DNA of 64,000 bases from Obrimoposthia wandeli (taxonomy: Eukaryota): positions 310,001 through 374,000 of the forward strand of contig CDROCS010000407.1 in NCBI GenBank assembly GCA_977020255.1. Direction: 5' to 3'. A program made the position numbers and the translations under genes. Of the stretch, positions 1-9,200 are shown piece after piece; positions within the stretch are counted from its first letter, which is position 1, and each line of letters begins with the position of its first letter. The notes beneath the pieces were generated by a model, which did not search any database, was not told where the DNA came from, and was given only the letters and a program-made list of their open reading frames with translations.

Positions 1-384
1 TGTGCTGCGACATGGGAGATAAGAGACATATTAGTCTGTGAGGGGAGATCCTTGCAGCAGCAGAGTGGGTAGTGTTGGTAGAGAAGACACAGGGTGAAAC
101 AGCATTGGGACAGGGAAACTCGATAAACTGGTATTGGCAGGGACAGTCGTTGTCGCTCTCCACCGGCTAGGGGAATCGAAGTGATAAATCCCGGCTCTGC
201 ACATACACACACGTGCAGGCGGGTTTTTTTTGCCTCCTGTTCTGTACGACGATTCACTGGCCGAGATTGGGCAGACAGGAAACTGCTACTGTTGTGCTGG
301 CCGAGAACACTGGAATTGGATTTTTCACACTGGGCCAGGAACGCCTCGACGCCCATCAAAGTGCATCCAGATGCACTGTCTGCG
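1..384 (-). other. GC-rich segment with a stop-free minus-strand frame (~127 codons); exon or retroelement fragment, unidentified
   Basis: Frame ADSASGCTLMGVEAFLAQCEK...CCCKDLPSQTNMSLISHVAA runs from the gap to the window edge. No family recognised. Confidence 0.2.
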
Positions 385-522
385 NNNNNNNNNNNNNNNN
401 NNNNNNNNNNNNNNNNNNNNNNNNNNNNNNNNNNNNNNNNNNNNNNNNNNNNNNNNNNNNNNNNNNNNNNNNNNNNNNNNNNNNNNNNNNNNNNNNNNNN
501 NNNNNNNNNNNNNNNNNNNNNN
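385..522. other. Assembly gap (N run)
   Basis: 138 consecutive N; ORF-track entries spanning it are artefacts. Confidence 0.99.
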
Positions 523-620
523 TGACGATGTAGGAAGACTGAGAAGATAGGCCGCTGCTACTGGTCGGTAATTTTCAGTGGTAAAAATACTTGAGATAAA
601 AATCTCTTTTTCCATCTACT

Positions 621-693
621 TTTTCGCCGCCTTCCTGACGAGCCTGGCAAGGCGAAACGGGACGTCCACCCCGTCGGAGGCTGACAAGGAAAA
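621..693 (+). ncRNA. Type I hammerhead ribozyme (Penelope-like/retrozyme type)
   Basis: Stem I GCCTTC 629-634/GGAGGC 676-681; core CTGACGA 635-641; stem II GCC/GGC with loop TGGCAA; GAAA 654-657; stem III ACGGG/CCCGT; GTC cleavage triplet 673-675; distal TTTTC 621-625/GAAAA 689-693. Confidence 0.88.
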
Positions 694-799
694 CCTCCCT
701 GACTGTGGGCACTTCAGTTAATGTCAATTTTAATTGACCAAAAATTCATTAATTTTTATTAATTTTAATTAATTAATCCATTAAATAAATTATTTAACC

Positions 800-2972
800 C
801 AACAGAAGTACAAAAAGCATTAGAGGAATAAAAACAAAAGTTGATTCAAGCACCAACTTTAGCTTTTCCTAACATAAAAAAACAATTTATACTGATTACT
901 GACGCTAGTAACTATGATTTAGAAGCCGTACTAGGTCAAAAAGAAGAGGAATGAAAAGAGCATGTGATTGCATACATAAGCAGAGACTTAAACAAACCAG
1001 AAATGGGATATTCTACACTTGAGAAAGAATGTCTAGCGATCGTATATTCGACAAGAATATTAAGACATTATCTTTTAGGGAAAATAATAATTCTATACAC
1101 AGATCATAAATCGGTCCAATACTGATACAAACACAGATACGAATTGAGTAAATTGAACAGATGGTTTATAAAGATAGCAGAATTCGACATTGAAATTTTT
1201 CATAGAGTAGGTAAAGCTAACAGAAACGCCAATTGTTTGTAGAGAACGTAGATAAAAAGGAAATGTTATGAAAGTGGAATTACCAATTTTCAAAAATTGC
1301 AGATGACGAATTTAATCCTACGACGTGGACCACCCTAAATTACTTCCTGTAATGTTTCACACATTGAGCAGTGAAATAAACAAAAATAACCAAAAGTCCT
1401 ACAGTGTATGCAAACATTCAAGACATCCCGAACCGACTCAAATATGGCAGTAACCCAGAAAGAAGAGTTACACTCTTATCACTAATCGATCACCTACCTA
1501 AACCTTCTTTTGTCAAATCTTGTACCCGTGTTATTCACAATAGGTGTCACCACAGGAACAGTCAAATAGGTGTCACCACAGGAACAGTCAAATACACCAT
1601 CGATGTAGGCAAAGATAGAACATCTCAACACATTATAAGAGATAAGTTGCAAGAACGAGAAGTTAAACGATACACCCAAAAATATCTCATAAAAGTCAAC
1701 CTAATAGCAACTAGCCCAATAGCTCATGTATTCGTTGAACAACCCATATCAGTAAACGAATATCTTTTATGTATACCTATAGAACCTTGGTACCACCTAC
1801 TAGCAACCTTTTCATTAGCAGATAAATAATGTCTTAGAACGAATGATACACCTGAAGTTCTCAAACACAAAGCGATAACAATTGCATATTGTAATATGTA
1901 CAATAAAGAGAACAACGCGCACACAGTCTAAATCACAGTATGTGATTTTGAGCAAAGAATCTCTACCACTATCATTCACACCCCACGTACATACATAACA
2001 AACTGTAATACAACCCAACATGGACTAGCAAAACCTGATCTACTAGGAAGAACATATCAAAGAGATGTGGGTAACCAACTGTTGTCCATGATCAACTGCA
2101 AACTGATAATTGGCAGTGATCTACATACACTGCTAGTATATTTCCATATACCTTTCACATTGCTCATAAGAATCCAAAACCTTACGCAAAACGCCTCCAT
2201 CACTAGACCAGGGGAGAACCCTAAACTTTGTAAAAAGAGGTTGTTATCAAATGGATCCACATAAAACCTTAATCATATCACAAACGCTATGATGATGCAG
2301 ATTGACGTATGAGAGCATTTCGAATACACCACGATAATTGAAAATATGACGCCAAGCCATAGATATGAACAATCTCATCCGATCAAACACCAACATAGGA
2401 AACACCCCACAAACTCTAAAGCGCAAGAATCCCAGTACAACTCATGAAAAATATACGGAAAAGGTCATACCTAAAATTTACTTGAATTCTCCTACCATAC
2501 TCTAGGAAACTAGGAGAATCCTTCGCACCATCTCAAATTTATAGAAGAAGGTTAATAACGACTGAAATACCTTGTGGAACGTCCATTTTGTCACATCTAC
2601 TACCACCATCTGCCGTACCGGCACTACCAACTCGAGGTTACATCACCCGGTCACTGGAGGACATCGAAGCTGCAGGACATCGAGATAAACATTGATCTTG
2701 ATGATCTAGACATTGAGCCAGACATAATCTTACTGGACTAAAAATATTGTAACATTGACACAGGCACTATATGCCAAATCTTGACATATATCTTTCACCG
2801 TATATATCTATATATTTTACCTATCTGTGAATATGTATCTTACCTGATCTATCCTACGATGATTGTGCACCTATATACTTATGTATCACATTTTATATCT
2901 GTCCAACGAGTGTCTGAAAATCATAAAAACCTATTTAATTTTCGGGATGAAAATCTTTGAAAACCTCGCGAA
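800..2972 (+). mobile_element. Decayed Ty3/Gypsy internal region: RNase H remnant (~800-1250), integrase absent, then env-like ORF remnant
   Basis: KLIQAPTLAFPNIKKQFILITDASNYDLEAVLGQ...YSTLEKECLAIVY...YTDHK...AEFDIEIFHRVGKAN with stops; abuts a TG-start LTR at 2973. Confidence 0.85.
1480..2740 (+). pseudogene. Env-like third ORF remnant of the Gypsy element
   Basis: Hydrophobic leader YLNLLLSNLVPVLFTIGVTTG, frameshifted by a perfect 26-bp tandem duplication (1539-1590); scattered Cys; sequons NTT, NLT, NAS, NGS; hydrophobic LLVYFHIPFTLLI; lies between RNase H and the 3' LTR. Confidence 0.45.
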
Positions 2973-3307: not shown

Positions 3308-4128
3308 TGTTGGGAATGATAAAATGAATTTTTAGGGTGGTCGTTTGTGAGGGTGCTGTTGGTCTTTCTGTTTTAATCTATGTTGTTCGTTTTTTGATAA
3401 GAAAAATGTGAAGTTTTGTGTTTTTTTGGGTTTTAGAGTTTTTTTTTCATAGAAGTTCTTTTTTATTTGTTATTAGTGCTTTTGGAGTTCATTTTTTAGC
3501 TAGTAATAAATATTTTTCTTTATTTTCTTTAAAGACTGCTAATAAATCCCAAGATAATTTTTTCTTTTCTCTTTTTATATTGCTATTTGTTTATTTTAAA
3601 AAAAAAAGATTTTCTTTAAAATTCCAAGAAATTTTATATATATATATATTTTTTTTTCTTTTCTCTTTTTATATTGCTATCATCATCATTCCTTTACAAT
3701 CTCGCTCCATGTTTCCTTGTCTGACTGCCACTCTCTCATCATATCTCTTGCCTCATCTCAACAGGAGACACCCAGCCAACAGCAGCAACCACAGCAGCGA
3801 CCACAACAGCGACCACAGCAGCGACCACTGCCACCATTACTTTTATTTATCTTCACTGATGGCCAGCAGTTGATCTCACATCCTACCAGCAAGCCGATGC
3901 AGACTCCTATTTGACTTATCTCTTTCCTACACACACTCTAAATTGAGACAGTAGTTTTGTTTTTGTGCAATTTTTTAAAATTATACAATTTTCTCTGACA
4001 AAAACTCACAATTTTGATTATTTAGAATAACTTCTCACAAAATGCATTTGGAACAGTTTCCCAATTAACAATTTATTGAGTTGCATTTGTTGGATTACCC
4101 TTTTCACAAATATTGTGAAATATTAACA
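3308..4128. mobile_element. Solo LTR (821 bp) nested in the Gypsy LTR
   Basis: TGTT...AACA termini; CAAG TSD at 3304-3307 and 4129-4132; absent from the homologous LTR at 31.2-32.4 kb. Confidence 0.85.
3782..3830. repeat. 12-bp minisatellite (CAGCGACCACAG-like, ~4 copies)
   Basis: Directly visible inside the solo LTR. Confidence 0.85.
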
Positions 4129-6219: not shown

Positions 6220-9200
6220 TGTAGTCAGACCGAAATTCGTCCCAACGTCTCAGACCGCAAAGAGTAGAGTTGAGATGTAGCGTATTCTGTCGGGAATTGG
6301 TGACGCCCATTTGATCAAGGGATCACCACCCCTTCTATTAAATACGTTTTTGGGAAATGGTGGCGCCCAAGTGTAAAAAGGCTACCACCCTTTCTAACCC
6401 ATAAATTCAATTCAAAAATAGCCTTATTAAATAATTTTAAATTTCTAGTTATTACTATAAAAAATTTGAAAAAATATTTTTTATCCGTTTTTTGATCAAC
6501 AGAGGTTTTTTAGGGATATATAACAAATTTTTAAACATTAGCAGATATACGTTATTTAGAGAATGTCGACGGATTAGGTCCTCAGGGTTTAATAAAATAA
6601 AGACGGCTGAAGACTGTTTTGTGCTCGGTCCTAAAGAAAAATAAGATCAATTCAAAATATATTCAAATATTTATTAAAACCTTGACCAGAAGGTAGTAAA
6701 GATTCTCTAAAAGATGGGACTAGCAAAAAACGGAAGATCTGCGAGAAGCAGAGGAAGTATGTCAAGAAATGAACAAAATAAACGTAGAGTAAAGAACAAG
6801 GTCGAAGATAGGGTAACGGAGATTCGACAAAATTTTATTTAATAATAAATATTGTGAACCAATAAGAAATGCATTCCTGAGCAATGCAACAACAGTAAAC
6901 CCAGCTATGGAAAAGAACGAAATGGGAGTCGAAGTATGGAAAAAGTGTAATAATTATGGAGAGTCACACTACACAGATTAGTGTCAAAAGTTAAGAAGAA
7001 TGACGTTAGAAGACAGATGGAATGTAGTAAAAGAAAAGAAGCTGTGTAGCAATTGTTTGAAACCCGGTCACTGGGGGAAGGATTGTAGAATAGAAAAGCT
7101 GTGTAAAACAAATGGGTGTACGATGAAGCACCATTGGCTATTACATAGAACAAGAGAAGATACTAAAATTAACAAAATCCACAATAATACGTTTACACAT
7201 GTGGGTAGTAGAATGAATTCAACAGTGACATTAAGAAAAATGGACACCGAGAAATTAAGATAAATGTATTATTGGATGATGCAAGCACCGTTAGCTACAT
7301 CGGTCAGGCAGTAAGTTTTAGGCTTAAAAGGAGTGAAGAATGTTACTTCAATTGGAGTGATTGGTGGAAGAACAAAAGATTTAGAAAGTAGATTAGTGAC
7401 TTTCCAGATACAAAATTTGAGTGGATCCTTTCGACGGAATGTAGAAGCATTGGCAATAAAAGAAGTCACTGGAGATTTACGAGTAGTAATTTGAAATGAG
7501 GAAGGAAATAATTGAAAGCATTTACAAAATATTCGCTTTCAATCTACGAATAATGGGAGAGCAGTAGAGATGCTGATCGGTGCAGATTGGATAAAGATGC
7601 ATAAATGTTTAGAAGGGAGGGTTTAAGAATCTGATTGCACGAAGGACACCATTAGGGTGGACATATGTAGGAAAGGCTAATTCAGGAAAAAATATAACAA
7701 CCAAACAAATTTCATTAGAAGTTATTTTAGTAATACCGAGTTAGATGACAAACTACGTCGATTTTGGGAAATAGAACATCAAACCGAAGAATGTAATACA
7801 ATGACGAAATATGAAAAAAGAATGTATGAAAGTAGTGCTAAGGCGATGGTAATGGAAGAATGAAGATTTACAGTGAAAATTCCATGGCAAGAAGGGGTTA
7901 TGGAACTTGAAGTTAATAAACAAATGGCGATAAAGAGATTTCAAAGTTTACACAATCAATTGAACAAAGATCCGGTTTTAACTAAGGAGTATGCAAAAAT
8001 AATTGAGGAACAGAAGGGAAAAGATTATACACATGAGGTAAAACCAGAAGAAAATAAAAATAATAAGTGGTACTTACCACATTTCAGAGTACTAAAATGG
8101 GATCGAAACACTACAAAGGTGAGAATCGTGTTCGATGCAGCGGCAATGAATAATGGGAAGAGTATTAATGATTACATAAACTGTGGTCCTAAGTTGCAGG
8201 GAAATTTGATGGAGAATCTGTTGAAATTTCGTAAGAGTAAAATAGCTTTTGTCTGTAACATTACTGATTTTTGCAAGTGAAAGTCGACAAGGCTGACCGT
8301 AAATGGTTAAGATTTTTATGGAGTAACGATAAAGGAGAAATAACCACATTTGAATACGAACGAGTGGTATTTGGATTAAATGCCTCACCGTTCTTAGCAC
8401 AAATGGTGACTAGAGAAAATGCAGAAAGGTTTCTGATAAATTATCCATCTAGTGCAAAGCTAATCTTGGAAAATACATATATGGATGACATGTTGTGTTC
8501 GATGGATACAGAAGAAGAAGCAACCAAGACCATTGAGGAATTAAAAGAAATATGGCAAGGGGCGAAGATGGAAGCGAAAAAATGGATCAATAGTAGTGAA
8601 AAAGTGAATCAGTTAATCCCCACAGCAAAAATACTTCAGATTGAAGATGGAATACGAATAGTAAAGACGTTAGGTATACGATGGAATTCAAGTGAAAACT
8701 ACTTTACTTGTCAAAATGATATAAAATACGGATCTGAAATAACCAAGAGGGAGTTTCTTAGTATTTTATCAACTGTTTTCGATCCATTAGGATTTGTCGG
8801 TCCATTCATAATAAGAGCAAAGATGCTAATGCAGAAGATATGGTTGGAAGGAATAGAATGGGACCAAAAAATAGGAGGAGATTTGAAAAACGAAGTTATG
8901 GATTGGCTTATGCAATGTGAAGAGTCGCGGAAAGTTCAAATAACTAGATGGATAAAATAGCAAAAAATATGGAAATGGAAATTCATGTTTTTGTAGATGC
9001 ATTCATAAAAGCTTTCGGTACAGTTGCATATGTAAGGACAAAGGAAGCTGAAAAGGTGGGAGTAATATTAATTTCTGCAAAAAAAGGAGTAAATTTGGCT
9101 AAAGTAGTAGCGAGATCATGGAATGAAAATGTTAAAGTTATACAATTTTGATCGGATAGCGAAGATGTATTATGGTGTATCAAACAGCAAGGGAGACAAT

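What the first reader, a model, noticed from the sequence alone, without database searches (positions are those of the whole stretch)
621..693. Complete type I hammerhead ribozyme beside an assembly gap
Seen: every canonical core element is present (CUGACGA, G-C-closed stem II, GAAA, A-U-closed stem III, GUC site, 6-bp stem I with one G-U). Stem I extends through an asymmetric internal loop that could contact loop II (UGGCAA). Known: metazoan type I hammerheads mark Penelope-like element pLTRs and tandem non-LTR retrozymes. Inference: the gap ~100 bp upstream may hide a collapsed tandem array, i.e. a ribozyme-bearing retroelement family possibly undescribed in this genome.
Basis: partly seen in the sequence, partly recalled or inferred. 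Interest (0 to 1): 0.8.

Follow-up and report, generated by a model that had tools for sequence, protein, structure and literature searches.

The report
Antisense hammerhead ribozyme in solo LTR
The self-cutting hammerhead RNA motif is really there, but it is a standard part of the long terminal repeat of a virus-like gypsy-type jumping gene, present in thousands of copies on the strand opposite that element's genes, and is not part of a Penelope element or a tandem ribozyme array.

Summary
Observation confirmed. Window 629-681 (+) holds every hammerhead core base and three helices, with the cut expected after C675.

Rfam Hammerhead_1 scores it at 21.6 bits, below the cut-off of 34. Sibling copies in the same genome reach 36-38.5 bits.

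The Penelope / tandem-retrozyme reading is not supported.
- The motif lies about 125 nt from the ...CCCAACA end of an LTR.
- The window's copy is a solo LTR (TGTT...AACA, 4-bp duplication GAAG). It sits inside the pol gene of an older gypsy-like element.
- A full-length relative is 14.3 kb, with 1,035-nt LTRs and a TCTT duplication. Its genes run gag?-env-PR-RT-RH-IN-exonuclease, the "Burro"-like gag-env-pol type.
- All those genes lie on the strand opposite the ribozyme.

About 25 otherwise unalignable LTR families carry a hammerhead at the same place, with compensatory changes in all three helices. I therefore read it as a maintained ribozyme that can only cut antisense or read-through RNA crossing the LTR.

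Cleavage, transcription and biological role are untested; no RNA data could be obtained.

The N run falls in a length-variable part of the LTR.

This scan has already noted the same antisense hammerhead-in-LTR arrangement on other pieces of this genome.

The parts
1..804 (-). The part of a solo LTR that lies inside the window. The LTR starts 538 nt left of window base 1 and is about 1,343 bp long including the N run. The strand given is the LTR's own sense, inferred from full-length relatives; the ribozyme is on the + strand.
   Evidence: Homology to the LTRs in L034 and L035 runs from L001 440 to window 804. The right end is sharp at 804 in all copies. TGTT...AACA ends and a GAAG duplication are present.
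385..522 (.). Run of 138 N inside the LTR. It was not filled or looked up.
   Evidence: Seen. The flanks 1-384 and 523-804 both belong to the same LTR family. The corresponding interval is 84-1,080 nt long in other copies.
629..681 (+). Type I hammerhead ribozyme motif: helix I open, helices II and III capped by loops.
   Evidence: Rfam RF00163 aligns the full model at 21.6 bits. My own model R1 gives 66.6 bits. Sequence read.
635..641 (+). Core box CUGACGA (C3-A9).
   Evidence: These columns are invariant or nearly invariant across 25 families.
642..653 (+). Helix II hairpin: 642-645 pairs with 650-653, loop GGCA.
   Evidence: Covariation at pair 18/29 of alignment A1.
654..657 (+). Core GAAA (G12-A15.1).
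   Evidence: Invariant in A1.
657..674 (+). Helix III hairpin: A657-U674 plus 658-661 pairing with 670-673, with an 8-nt loop.
   Evidence: Compensatory changes in sibling families.
675..675 (+). C17. The predicted scissile bond lies between C675 and G676.
   Evidence: Position follows from the Rfam alignment. Cleavage itself was not tested.
620..625 (+). 5' strand of a possible helix I extension. It would pair with 688-693 across the internal loop GCC / UGACAA.
   Evidence: Complementarity seen, and the extended fold was evaluated. Sibling families have A/U-rich complements but in a shifted register. This is not demonstrated.
688..693 (+). 3' strand of the possible helix I extension.
   Evidence: As for 620-625.
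693..717 (+). Conserved box ACCTCCCTGACTGTGGGCACTTCAG just 3' of the ribozyme. Its CCUCC can pair with the 3' strand of helix I in a competing fold.
   Evidence: Conserved across families. The sibling form GATTGTGGGCATTTCAG occurs 306 times exactly, against 0 for the control. The competing fold appears.
723..738 (+). Small conserved palindrome GTCAAT-TTTA-ATTGAC.
   Evidence: Present in most sibling families at the same place.
794..804 (+). LTR terminus ...TTAACCCAACA.
   Evidence: Flanks differ between copies immediately after this point. Sibling families end in CCCAACA.
805..808 (.). Right copy of the 4-bp target-site duplication GAAG. The left copy lies outside the window, at L001 436-439.
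809..1260 (+). Decayed RNase H region of an older gypsy-like pol gene into which the LTR inserted. Its RT part lies left of the LTR, outside the window.
   Evidence: Removing the LTR and one GAAG copy joins RT (YIDD) and RNase H (TDAS...) in one frame. tblastn hits to RT on the + strand lie on both sides.

Best explanation
The 53-nt motif is a genuine type I hammerhead ribozyme. It is an inherited, family-wide part of the long terminal repeats of gypsy-type, envelope-carrying (gag-env-pol, 'Burro'-like) LTR retroelements in this AT-rich animal genome.

The window's copy sits in a solo LTR, left after an insertion into the pol gene of an older gypsy-like element. The ribozyme lies about 125 nt inside one LTR edge. 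It is on the strand opposite the element's genes.

It therefore cannot cut the element's own genomic RNA. It can fold only in RNA made across the LTR in the antisense direction. Such RNA could be antisense LTR transcripts or read-through from neighbouring promoters.

In such RNA it would fold into the three-helix junction and cut after C675. This leaves a 2',3'-cyclic phosphate upstream and a 5'-OH downstream. Antisense or read-through RNA would thus be severed at each LTR.

Shown: the motif, its membership of an LTR family, the solo-LTR anatomy, the antisense orientation, and conservation of the fold across diverged LTR families.

Inferred: catalysis, the existence of the antisense RNA, and the benefit. 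Possible benefits are blunting antisense or double-stranded RNA, or uncapping outward read-through.
For: Motif:
- Sequence read and full-model Rfam alignment.

Repeat family:
- 1,992 candidates at the first look; all 40 scored were 94-100% identical.
- The window's motif equals the modal sequence, identical in 12 of 30 copies.

LTR nature:
- Sharp end at window 804.
- In contig C3875, two 1,035-nt direct repeats are 97.2% identical and 13.3 kb apart, with TGTT...AACA ends and a TCTT duplication. Both repeats carry the motif.
- The window's copy is flanked by GAAG. Excising it restores the frame of the interrupted pol gene.

Orientation:
- The Pfam-identified PR, RT/RNase H, integrase, envelope and RNase T-like ORFs of that element lie on the opposite strand. 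No ORF on the ribozyme's strand matched Pfam.
- The exonuclease ORF lies in the same place and on the same strand beside the LTR in L004, L013, L015, L028, L054 and L056, at 45-91% amino-acid identity.
- A TGG-initiated primer-binding-like site abuts the LTR in the coding orientation in two subfamilies.

Conservation:
- The RF00163 search of the genome gave 30 diverse hits, 6 above the cut-off.
- Most share the same downstream box, palindrome and CCCAACA end.
- On 25 families, 91.7% of cells pair, against 29-49% when partners are slid. Eight pairs change on both sides. None of 500 shuffles reached the observed score.
- RNAalifold recovers helices I and III and part of helix II de novo.
- Copies collected by the core boxes and the downstream box, not by pairing, show compensatory helix III variants such as CGUGG/CCACG, CGAGG/CUCCG and CAGGG/CUCUG.
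- Alignability between families peaks at the ribozyme and vanishes beyond about 250 nt.

Literature:
- Animal type I hammerheads are described in non-LTR retrozymes, Penelope elements and Terminons (PMC7761336, PMC7229834).
- Burro and gag-env-pol elements are described without any ribozyme (PMC6431247, PMC13524379).
Against: - No RNA evidence exists.
- The window's copy scores below Rfam's gathering score.
- In its 86-nt context the minimum-energy fold is not the hammerhead: -27.3 against -21 to -22 kcal/mol, z = -0.88.
- The family set used for covariation was ascertained with a hammerhead model. This favours sequences that fold.
- G-U pairs (23) exceed A-C mismatches (13) only mildly.
- Individual copies decay freely, core included.
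- Only 125 of 306 exact copies of the downstream box keep both core boxes at the set spacing.
- An antisense position gives no obvious role in the element's own replication.
- The primer-binding site was not matched to any tRNA, and no polypurine tract was seen.
Confidence: 0.6

Rival explanations
1. Passenger relic. An ancestral LTR captured a hammerhead, for example from a retrozyme or a Penelope element. The motif has been carried along ever since without any function. Its apparent conservation then reflects shared descent and the way the copies were found.
For: - The antisense position gives no role in the element's RNA.
- There is no expression evidence.
- Copies decay in the core as elsewhere.
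- The sibling set was ascertained with a hammerhead model.
- Penelope-type minimal hammerheads coexist in the genome, in L052, L053 and L068.
Against: - LTR families that are otherwise unalignable keep the core invariant.
- They change helix pairs on both sides: 8 pairs, 38 cells, 0 of 500 shuffles.
- Copies not selected for pairing show the same compensatory changes.
- The position relative to the LTR end is fixed across families.
Confidence: 0.2
2. LTR-retrozyme-like excision. RNA made on the ribozyme's strand across a whole element is cut in both LTRs. This releases a unit-length antisense RNA with 5'-OH and cyclic-phosphate ends, which is then circularised or otherwise used. It would be an animal counterpart of the plant LTR retrozymes.
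For: - Both LTRs of the C3875 element carry the motif in the same orientation.
- Plant LTR retrozymes work this way, with a hammerhead in each LTR and 4-bp duplications (PMC4918200, PMC7761336).
- The stable helix III allows cutting by a single motif.
Against: - The excised RNA would be 13 kb of antisense coding sequence.
- Most copies seen are solo or decayed LTRs.
- The elements are autonomous and coding on the other strand.
- There are no RNA data.
Confidence: 0.1
3. Sense-strand element. Selection acts on the coding strand, on a DNA site or an RNA three-way junction in U3/R. Its complement merely imitates a hammerhead.
For: - The reverse complement forms the same helices.
- The adjacent conserved box and palindrome could be promoter elements of the LTR.
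- The excess of G-U over A-C is small.
Against: - A sense-strand element would have to match the complement of all roughly 13 hammerhead core bases by chance, and these columns are invariant across families.
- Rfam finds no family on the opposite strand.
Confidence: 0.05
4. One reading: a Penelope pLTR or a tandem non-LTR retrozyme, with further units hidden in the gap.
For: In animals, type I hammerheads are typical of those elements (PMC7229834, PMC4209133). A gap lies about 100 nt upstream.
Against: - One motif per locus, with no tandem period.
- LTR ends, target duplications and gypsy genes are present.
- Helix III is long.
- Both gap flanks are LTR sequence, colinear with copies in which the interval is as short as 84-133 nt.
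Confidence: 0.03

Closest known systems
Plant LTR retrozymes (Cervera et al. 2016, PMC4918200)
   Same: A hammerhead lies inside each LTR of an element flanked by 4-bp target duplications and linked to Ty3/gypsy machinery.
   Different: - Those carry type III motifs, are small and non-coding, and are plant elements.
- Their ribozyme is in the element's transcript sense, so that a circular RNA is released.
- Here the motif is type I and the host is an animal.
- Here the elements are large and coding, and the motif is antisense to the genes.
Metazoan non-LTR retrozymes and canonical type I hammerheads (PMC7229834, PMC7761336)
   Same: Type I topology, a 6-bp helix I and a 4-bp helix II. Invertebrate motifs there also have a stable helix III and cut as monomers.
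   Different: Those are 170-400-nt tandem repeats without LTR, PBS or duplications of LTR type. Here there is one motif per LTR, in dispersed copies.
Penelope-like element pLTR hammerheads and Terminons (PMC4209133, PMC6431247)
   Same: A ribozyme sits in the terminal repeats of a retroelement.
   Different: Those are minimal motifs with almost no helix III, thought to act as dimers, next to a Penelope RT/GIY-YIG ORF. Here helix III has 5 bp and the genes are PR-RT-RH-IN.
Burro / gag-env-pol Ty3/gypsy errantivirus-like elements of planarians, nematodes and bryozoans (PMC6431247, PMC13524379)
   Same: Large LTR elements with a mononegavirus / class III-type envelope gene between gag and pol, many copies, and an AT-rich flatworm-like genome.
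   Different: Neither paper mentions a ribozyme in the LTRs. A search of PMC13524379 found 0 occurrences of 'hammerhead' or 'ribozyme'. In PMC6431247 hammerheads are named only for Terminons and Penelope elements.

Membership tests
Hammerhead ribozyme, type I (Rfam RF00163) | Conserved core: CUGANGA, GAAA, the A15.1-U16.1 pair and a cleavage-site triplet such as GUC. | tested here: met
   Window 635-641, 654-657, A657-U674 and 673-675.
Hammerhead ribozyme, type I (Rfam RF00163) | Three helices around the core, with helix I open and helices II and III capped. | tested here: met
   6, 4 and 5 bp. The full model aligned. RNAalifold on 11 relatives recovers helices I and III and part of helix II.
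Hammerhead ribozyme, type I (Rfam RF00163) | Score at or above Rfam's gathering threshold of 34 bits. | tested here: not met
   21.6 bits for the window's copy. Six sibling copies elsewhere in the genome score 35.8-38.5 bits.
Hammerhead ribozyme, type I (Rfam RF00163) | Helices supported by covariation among relatives. | tested here: met
   91.7% of cells paired, 8 pairs with changes on both sides, 0 of 500 shuffles, slid controls 29-49%. Caveat: the set was found with a hammerhead model. One search gives examples not selected for pairing.
Hammerhead ribozyme, type I (Rfam RF00163) | Mg2+-dependent self-cleavage at C17. | not testable with these tools
   Needs in vitro transcription. No RNA reads could be laid.
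Penelope-like element pLTR hammerhead | Lies in the terminal repeat of an element encoding Penelope RT and GIY-YIG. | tested here: not met
   Full-length relatives encode PR, RVT_1, RT_RNaseH_2 and Integrase_H2C2. The flanks of the window's copy are gypsy-like pol.
Penelope-like element pLTR hammerhead | Minimal helix III (0-2 bp, small palindromic loop), acting as a dimer (PMC4209133). | tested here: not met
   Helix III has 5 bp with an 8-nt loop.
Metazoan non-LTR retrozyme | Tandem repeats of about 170-400 nt, each with a hammerhead. | tested here: not met
   One family motif per locus in 30 of 30 loci. No tandem repeat at the site.
Metazoan non-LTR retrozyme | No LTR, PBS or LTR-type target duplication. 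| tested here: not met
   TGTT...AACA ends, 4-bp duplications and paired 1,035-nt LTRs.
Plant-type LTR retrozyme | A hammerhead in each LTR, with 4-bp target duplications. | tested here: met
Plant-type LTR retrozyme | Type III motif, a non-coding interior, and the ribozyme in the sense of the element's RNA. | tested here: not met
   The motif is type I. The interior encodes env, PR, RT, RH and IN on the opposite strand.
Ty3/gypsy LTR retroelement of gag-env-pol (Burro-like) type | Paired LTRs with TG...CA ends and a target duplication. | tested here: met
   Contig C3875: 1,035-nt LTRs 97.2% identical, TCTT duplication.
Ty3/gypsy LTR retroelement of gag-env-pol (Burro-like) type | PR-RT-RNase H-integrase order, with an envelope glycoprotein gene upstream of pol. 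| tested here: met
   Pfam hits to PF24664 (three pieces), then aspartyl protease, RVT_1, RT_RNaseH_2 and Integrase_H2C2, in that order on one strand. The arrangement is described in PMC6431247 and PMC13524379.
Ty3/gypsy LTR retroelement of gag-env-pol (Burro-like) type | tRNA primer-binding site and polypurine tract next to the LTRs. | tested here: inconclusive
   A TGG-initiated site lies 3 nt from the LTR in the coding orientation in two subfamilies. No tRNA gene was available to match it. No purine run lies beside the other LTR.

The most novel reading that the evidence does not exclude
A whole clade of autonomous, envelope-carrying gypsy-type retroelements of an animal keeps an active hammerhead on the antisense strand of its LTRs. 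It would use the ribozyme to process RNA of that strand. One possibility is destroying antisense or read-through RNA that would feed double-stranded-RNA or piRNA silencing. Another is releasing a unit-length antisense RNA between the two LTR ribozymes, an animal and antisense counterpart of plant LTR retrozymes.
Probability: 0.35. Interest if true: 0.8.

Novelty: new variant of a known kind. Interest (0 to 1): 0.55.

Why it matters
Self-cleaving ribozymes in animal genomes are currently tied to non-LTR retrozymes, Penelope-like elements and Terminons. In plants they are tied to small non-coding LTR retrozymes.

This case is different on three counts. The hammerhead is well formed and capable of acting as a monomer. 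It is kept at one fixed place in the LTRs of large, coding, virus-like gypsy elements. It lies on the strand those elements do not use for their genes.

If it is active, it points to a use of ribozymes in handling antisense or read-through transcription of retroelements. It also offers thousands of natural copies on which to test this.

For this particular window the practical result is modest. The site is one ordinary solo LTR of that family. It is neither a new Penelope or retrozyme family nor a hidden tandem array.

Tried and rejected
- **Rfam at gathering threshold.** No hit in the whole window.
- **Single-sequence folding.** The minimum-energy fold of 615-700 is not the hammerhead and is not unusually stable, z = -0.88. 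It is neither support nor refutation.
- **5'-truncated non-LTR or Penelope element.** My first reading of the coverage profile pointed that way: a sharp 3' end and ragged upstream homology. I rejected it once LTR pairs, target duplications and subfamily structure were seen.
- **Expression evidence.** Two run searches found only four runs of unknown kind from one sample, none on record as RNA. Nothing can be said about expression or cleavage.
- **Unbiased sample of LTRs.** Only counts and the tool's own match lines were used.
- **Alternative helix.** I considered pairing between the 3' strand of helix I and the downstream CCUCC box. In L050 the change in helix I is compensated in helix I's 5' strand, not in the box. 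The box is therefore probably conserved for another reason.
- **Strand test by G-U against A-C.** 23 against 13, which is too weak and biased to decide.
- **tRNA match for the primer-binding-like site.** No tRNA genes in the window or in 60 loci.
- **Taxon from the RT.** The Atlas search gave only generic gypsy RT clusters.
- **The N run.** Locus L001 covers the same place and holds letters there. I masked them in my scripts and did not read them. One search printed the LTR pair of another copy, reaching somewhat beyond the part of the LTR that is readable in the window. I made no use of it for the gap.

Full report
**The observation**

The stretch read has all the parts of a type I hammerhead at the stated coordinates.
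- Helix I: 629-634 pairs with 676-681, six pairs including one G-U.
- Core: CUGACGA at 635-641.
- Helix II: 642-645 pairs with 650-653, closed by G-C.
- GAAA at 654-657.
- Helix III: A657-U674 plus 658-661 pairing with 670-673, with an 8-nt loop.
- GUC at 673-675.

Rfam's Hammerhead_1 model aligns 629-681 from its first to its last position. It scores 21.6 bits, below the gathering score of 34. This is why the whole-window scan at gathering threshold listed nothing.

Single-sequence folding does not help. The minimal 53 nt fold into the hammerhead at -19.6 kcal/mol, against an MFE of -20.1. In an 86-nt context a competing fold is 5-6 kcal/mol better, with z = -0.88.

So the motif is real as a pattern. 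Its significance has to come from relatives.

**The repeat family**

A search of the window's own 1.35-Gb assembly with 523-720 found 1,992 first-look candidates. All 40 that were scored match at 94-100% over the full length, on different contigs.

Each fetched locus has exactly one family copy within +/-1.5 kb. Tandem Repeats Finder sees nothing at the site.

All copies end at the same base...TTAACCCAACA, which is window 804. After that base the flanks differ.

Upstream homology is ragged and falls into subfamilies.

The window's 53 nt are the modal sequence, identical in 12 of 30 copies. Other copies carry scattered substitutions, including in the core, as expected for decaying insertions.

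**It is an LTR**

In contig C3875, two 1,035-nt direct repeats are 97.2% identical and lie 13.3 kb apart. They begin TGTT and end AACA, and are flanked by the duplication TCTT. Both repeats carry the motif. The right LTR matches the window's copy. The left one has three substitutions in helices I and III.

Between the two repeats, the identifiable genes all lie on one strand. In order they are:
1. Two ORFs without Pfam hits, probably gag.
2. A mononegavirus-type fusion glycoprotein (PF24664, in three pieces).
3. Aspartyl protease.
4. RVT_1 with RT_RNaseH_2.
5. Integrase_H2C2.
6. Further ORFs.
7. An RNase T-like exonuclease.

This gag-env-pol order with a mononegavirus-like envelope gene matches the giant planarian 'Burro' elements (PMC6431247). 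It also matches the gag-env-pol errantivirus-like elements of flatworms, nematodes and bryozoans (PMC13524379).

The genome has about 31% G+C. Earlier notes of this scan call it planarian-like. I could not verify the species.

**The window's copy is a solo LTR**

- It starts 538 nt left of window base 1, at L001 440, with TGTTAAT.
- It ends at window 804.
- It is flanked by GAAG on both sides.
- Deleting the LTR and one GAAG copy joins an RT (YIDD motif) and an RNase H in one reading frame on the + strand.

The LTR therefore inserted into the pol gene of an older gypsy-like element and later lost its interior.

**Orientation**

The ribozyme is on the strand opposite the element's genes. This does not rest on one copy.
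- The exonuclease ORF lies just beyond the CCCAACA end, on the opposite strand, in L004, L013, L015 and L028. It does so too in two other LTR families, L054 and L056. Amino-acid identity ranges from 45 to 91%.
- A TGG-initiated primer-binding-like site follows the other LTR end in the coding orientation in two subfamilies.

In the element's own sense, the complement of the ribozyme lies about 125-175 nt from the start of the LTR. It follows an AT-rich stretch, a small palindrome and a conserved box.

**Conservation beyond the family**

A search of the genome with RF00163 listed 30 diverse hits, six of them above the gathering score.

About 24 of them share the same layout. The hammerhead comes first, then a conserved box. 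The box takes one of two forms...CCTCCCTGATTGTGGGCATTTCAG or ...AAAGTGCATT. Next come a palindrome, an AT-rich tail and a ...CCCAACA end 100-200 nt downstream.

My own model found four more in sequence that had been fetched for other reasons.

The 25-family alignment gave these results:
- The core is invariant or nearly so.
- 91.7% of cells pair, against 29-49% when partners are slid.
- Eight of 14 pairs change on both sides.
- None of 500 shuffles reaches the observed covariation.

RNAalifold recovers helices I and III and part of helix II without being told.

These families were found with a hammerhead model, so I looked for a less biased sample. The downstream box occurs 306 times exactly, against 0 for the control. 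Of these, 125 keep both core boxes at the right spacing. Their helix III shows compensatory variants, although pairing was not part of that search.

Between families, alignable sequence peaks at the ribozyme and is gone within about 250 nt.

The G-U to A-C ratio of 23 to 13 is too weak to add anything.

**How it most likely works**

A motif with all 13 core bases and three covarying helices is best read as a ribozyme. A stable 5-bp helix III should let it cut as a single unit. This differs from the canonical metazoan and Penelope motifs, which have 0-2-bp helix III (PMC4209133).

Because it is antisense, it cannot process the element's genomic RNA. It can only act on RNA that crosses the LTR in the other direction. 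It would cut after C675 and leave a cyclic phosphate and a 5'-OH.

I think the most likely use is to sever antisense or read-through transcripts at each LTR. The benefit is a guess. It might limit double-stranded RNA, or uncap outward transcripts.

The rival readings are listed with their odds. They are a functionless passenger, release of a unit-length antisense RNA as in plant LTR retrozymes, and a sense-strand element.

No RNA evidence could be obtained.

**The gap**

Both sides of the N run are LTR sequence.

The interval between the homologous flanks varies from 84 to 1,080 nt among copies. In L012 it is filled by a 9-nt-period array.

A break of the assembly at a simple repeat is therefore conceivable. 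Hidden ribozyme units are not indicated.

**Comparison and novelty**

The papers I could search place animal type I hammerheads in non-LTR retrozymes, Penelope elements and Terminons. They place LTR-borne hammerheads only in plant retrozymes (PMC7761336, PMC7229834, PMC4918200, and the 2026 preprint 10.64898/2026.07.22.740005).

Full-text searches for an antisense hammerhead in animal LTR elements found nothing.

I class it as a new variant of a known kind. Earlier notes of this scan describe the same arrangement on other pieces of this genome. I reached the reading before consulting them and tested it independently here.

Noticed in passing
L037 5665 to L033 9963 (contig C3875): A full-length 14.3-kb LTR element with a TCTT duplication. 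Its genes run gag?-env (PF24664)-PR-RT-RH-IN, then about 4 kb of extra ORFs ending in an RNase T-like 3'-5' exonuclease (PF00929). All ORFs are interrupted, so the copy is decayed.
   Followed up: partly
L037 about 6688-6740; L056 about 100 nt past its hammerhead: No polypurine tract lies next to the LTR on the 3' side of the element. Instead there is a conserved hairpin-like GTCAGA-4 nt-TCTGAC motif about 20 nt from the LTR edge, in two diverged families.
   Followed up: no
L001 437-658; L034 7683-8123 in ribozyme orientation; L012 about 1700-2560: The LTR of the window's subfamily holds a 74-nt repeat in 1-6 copies at its far end. It also holds a 9-nt-period array of very variable length directly upstream of the part that is readable in the window.
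   Followed up: partly
L022 276-333 (-), L030 479-534 (-), L008 2163-2220 (+), L036 5345-5400 (-): Further hammerheads of other LTR families turned up in flanking DNA that was fetched for other reasons. This suggests a very high genome-wide density of such LTRs, very roughly one per 50 kb in the DNA sampled.
   Followed up: partly
L052, L053 and L068 (about position 1500 in each): Three Hammerhead_1 hits have a different build: ...ATACTGACGAGTCCCGAACAGGACGAAAT..., with hardly any helix III. They resemble Penelope-type minimal motifs, so both kinds of hammerhead coexist in this genome.
   Followed up: no
window 805-1260, continuing rightwards: A decayed gypsy-like pol gene (RNase H, then integrase-like sequence) lies on the + strand with many stop codons. 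It is the host of the LTR insertion.
   Followed up: partly
window 1539-1594 and 3779-3828: Two short tandem repeats: a 26-nt unit in 2.2 copies and a 12-nt unit in 4.2 copies.
   Followed up: no
L001 1363-1500: The locus cut from the window's own contig carries letters where the window shows N. I masked them and left them unread, as the operators' note requires.
   Followed up: no
L033 7697-7969 (+) and 8617-8889 (+): Short open frames lie on the ribozyme's strand in the 1.2-kb leader between the LTR and the first large ORF. They are conserved in L031 and L032 only about as much as the DNA is, and have no Pfam hit. They are probably not genes. If they were, their RNA would run through the ribozyme.
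   Followed up: partly
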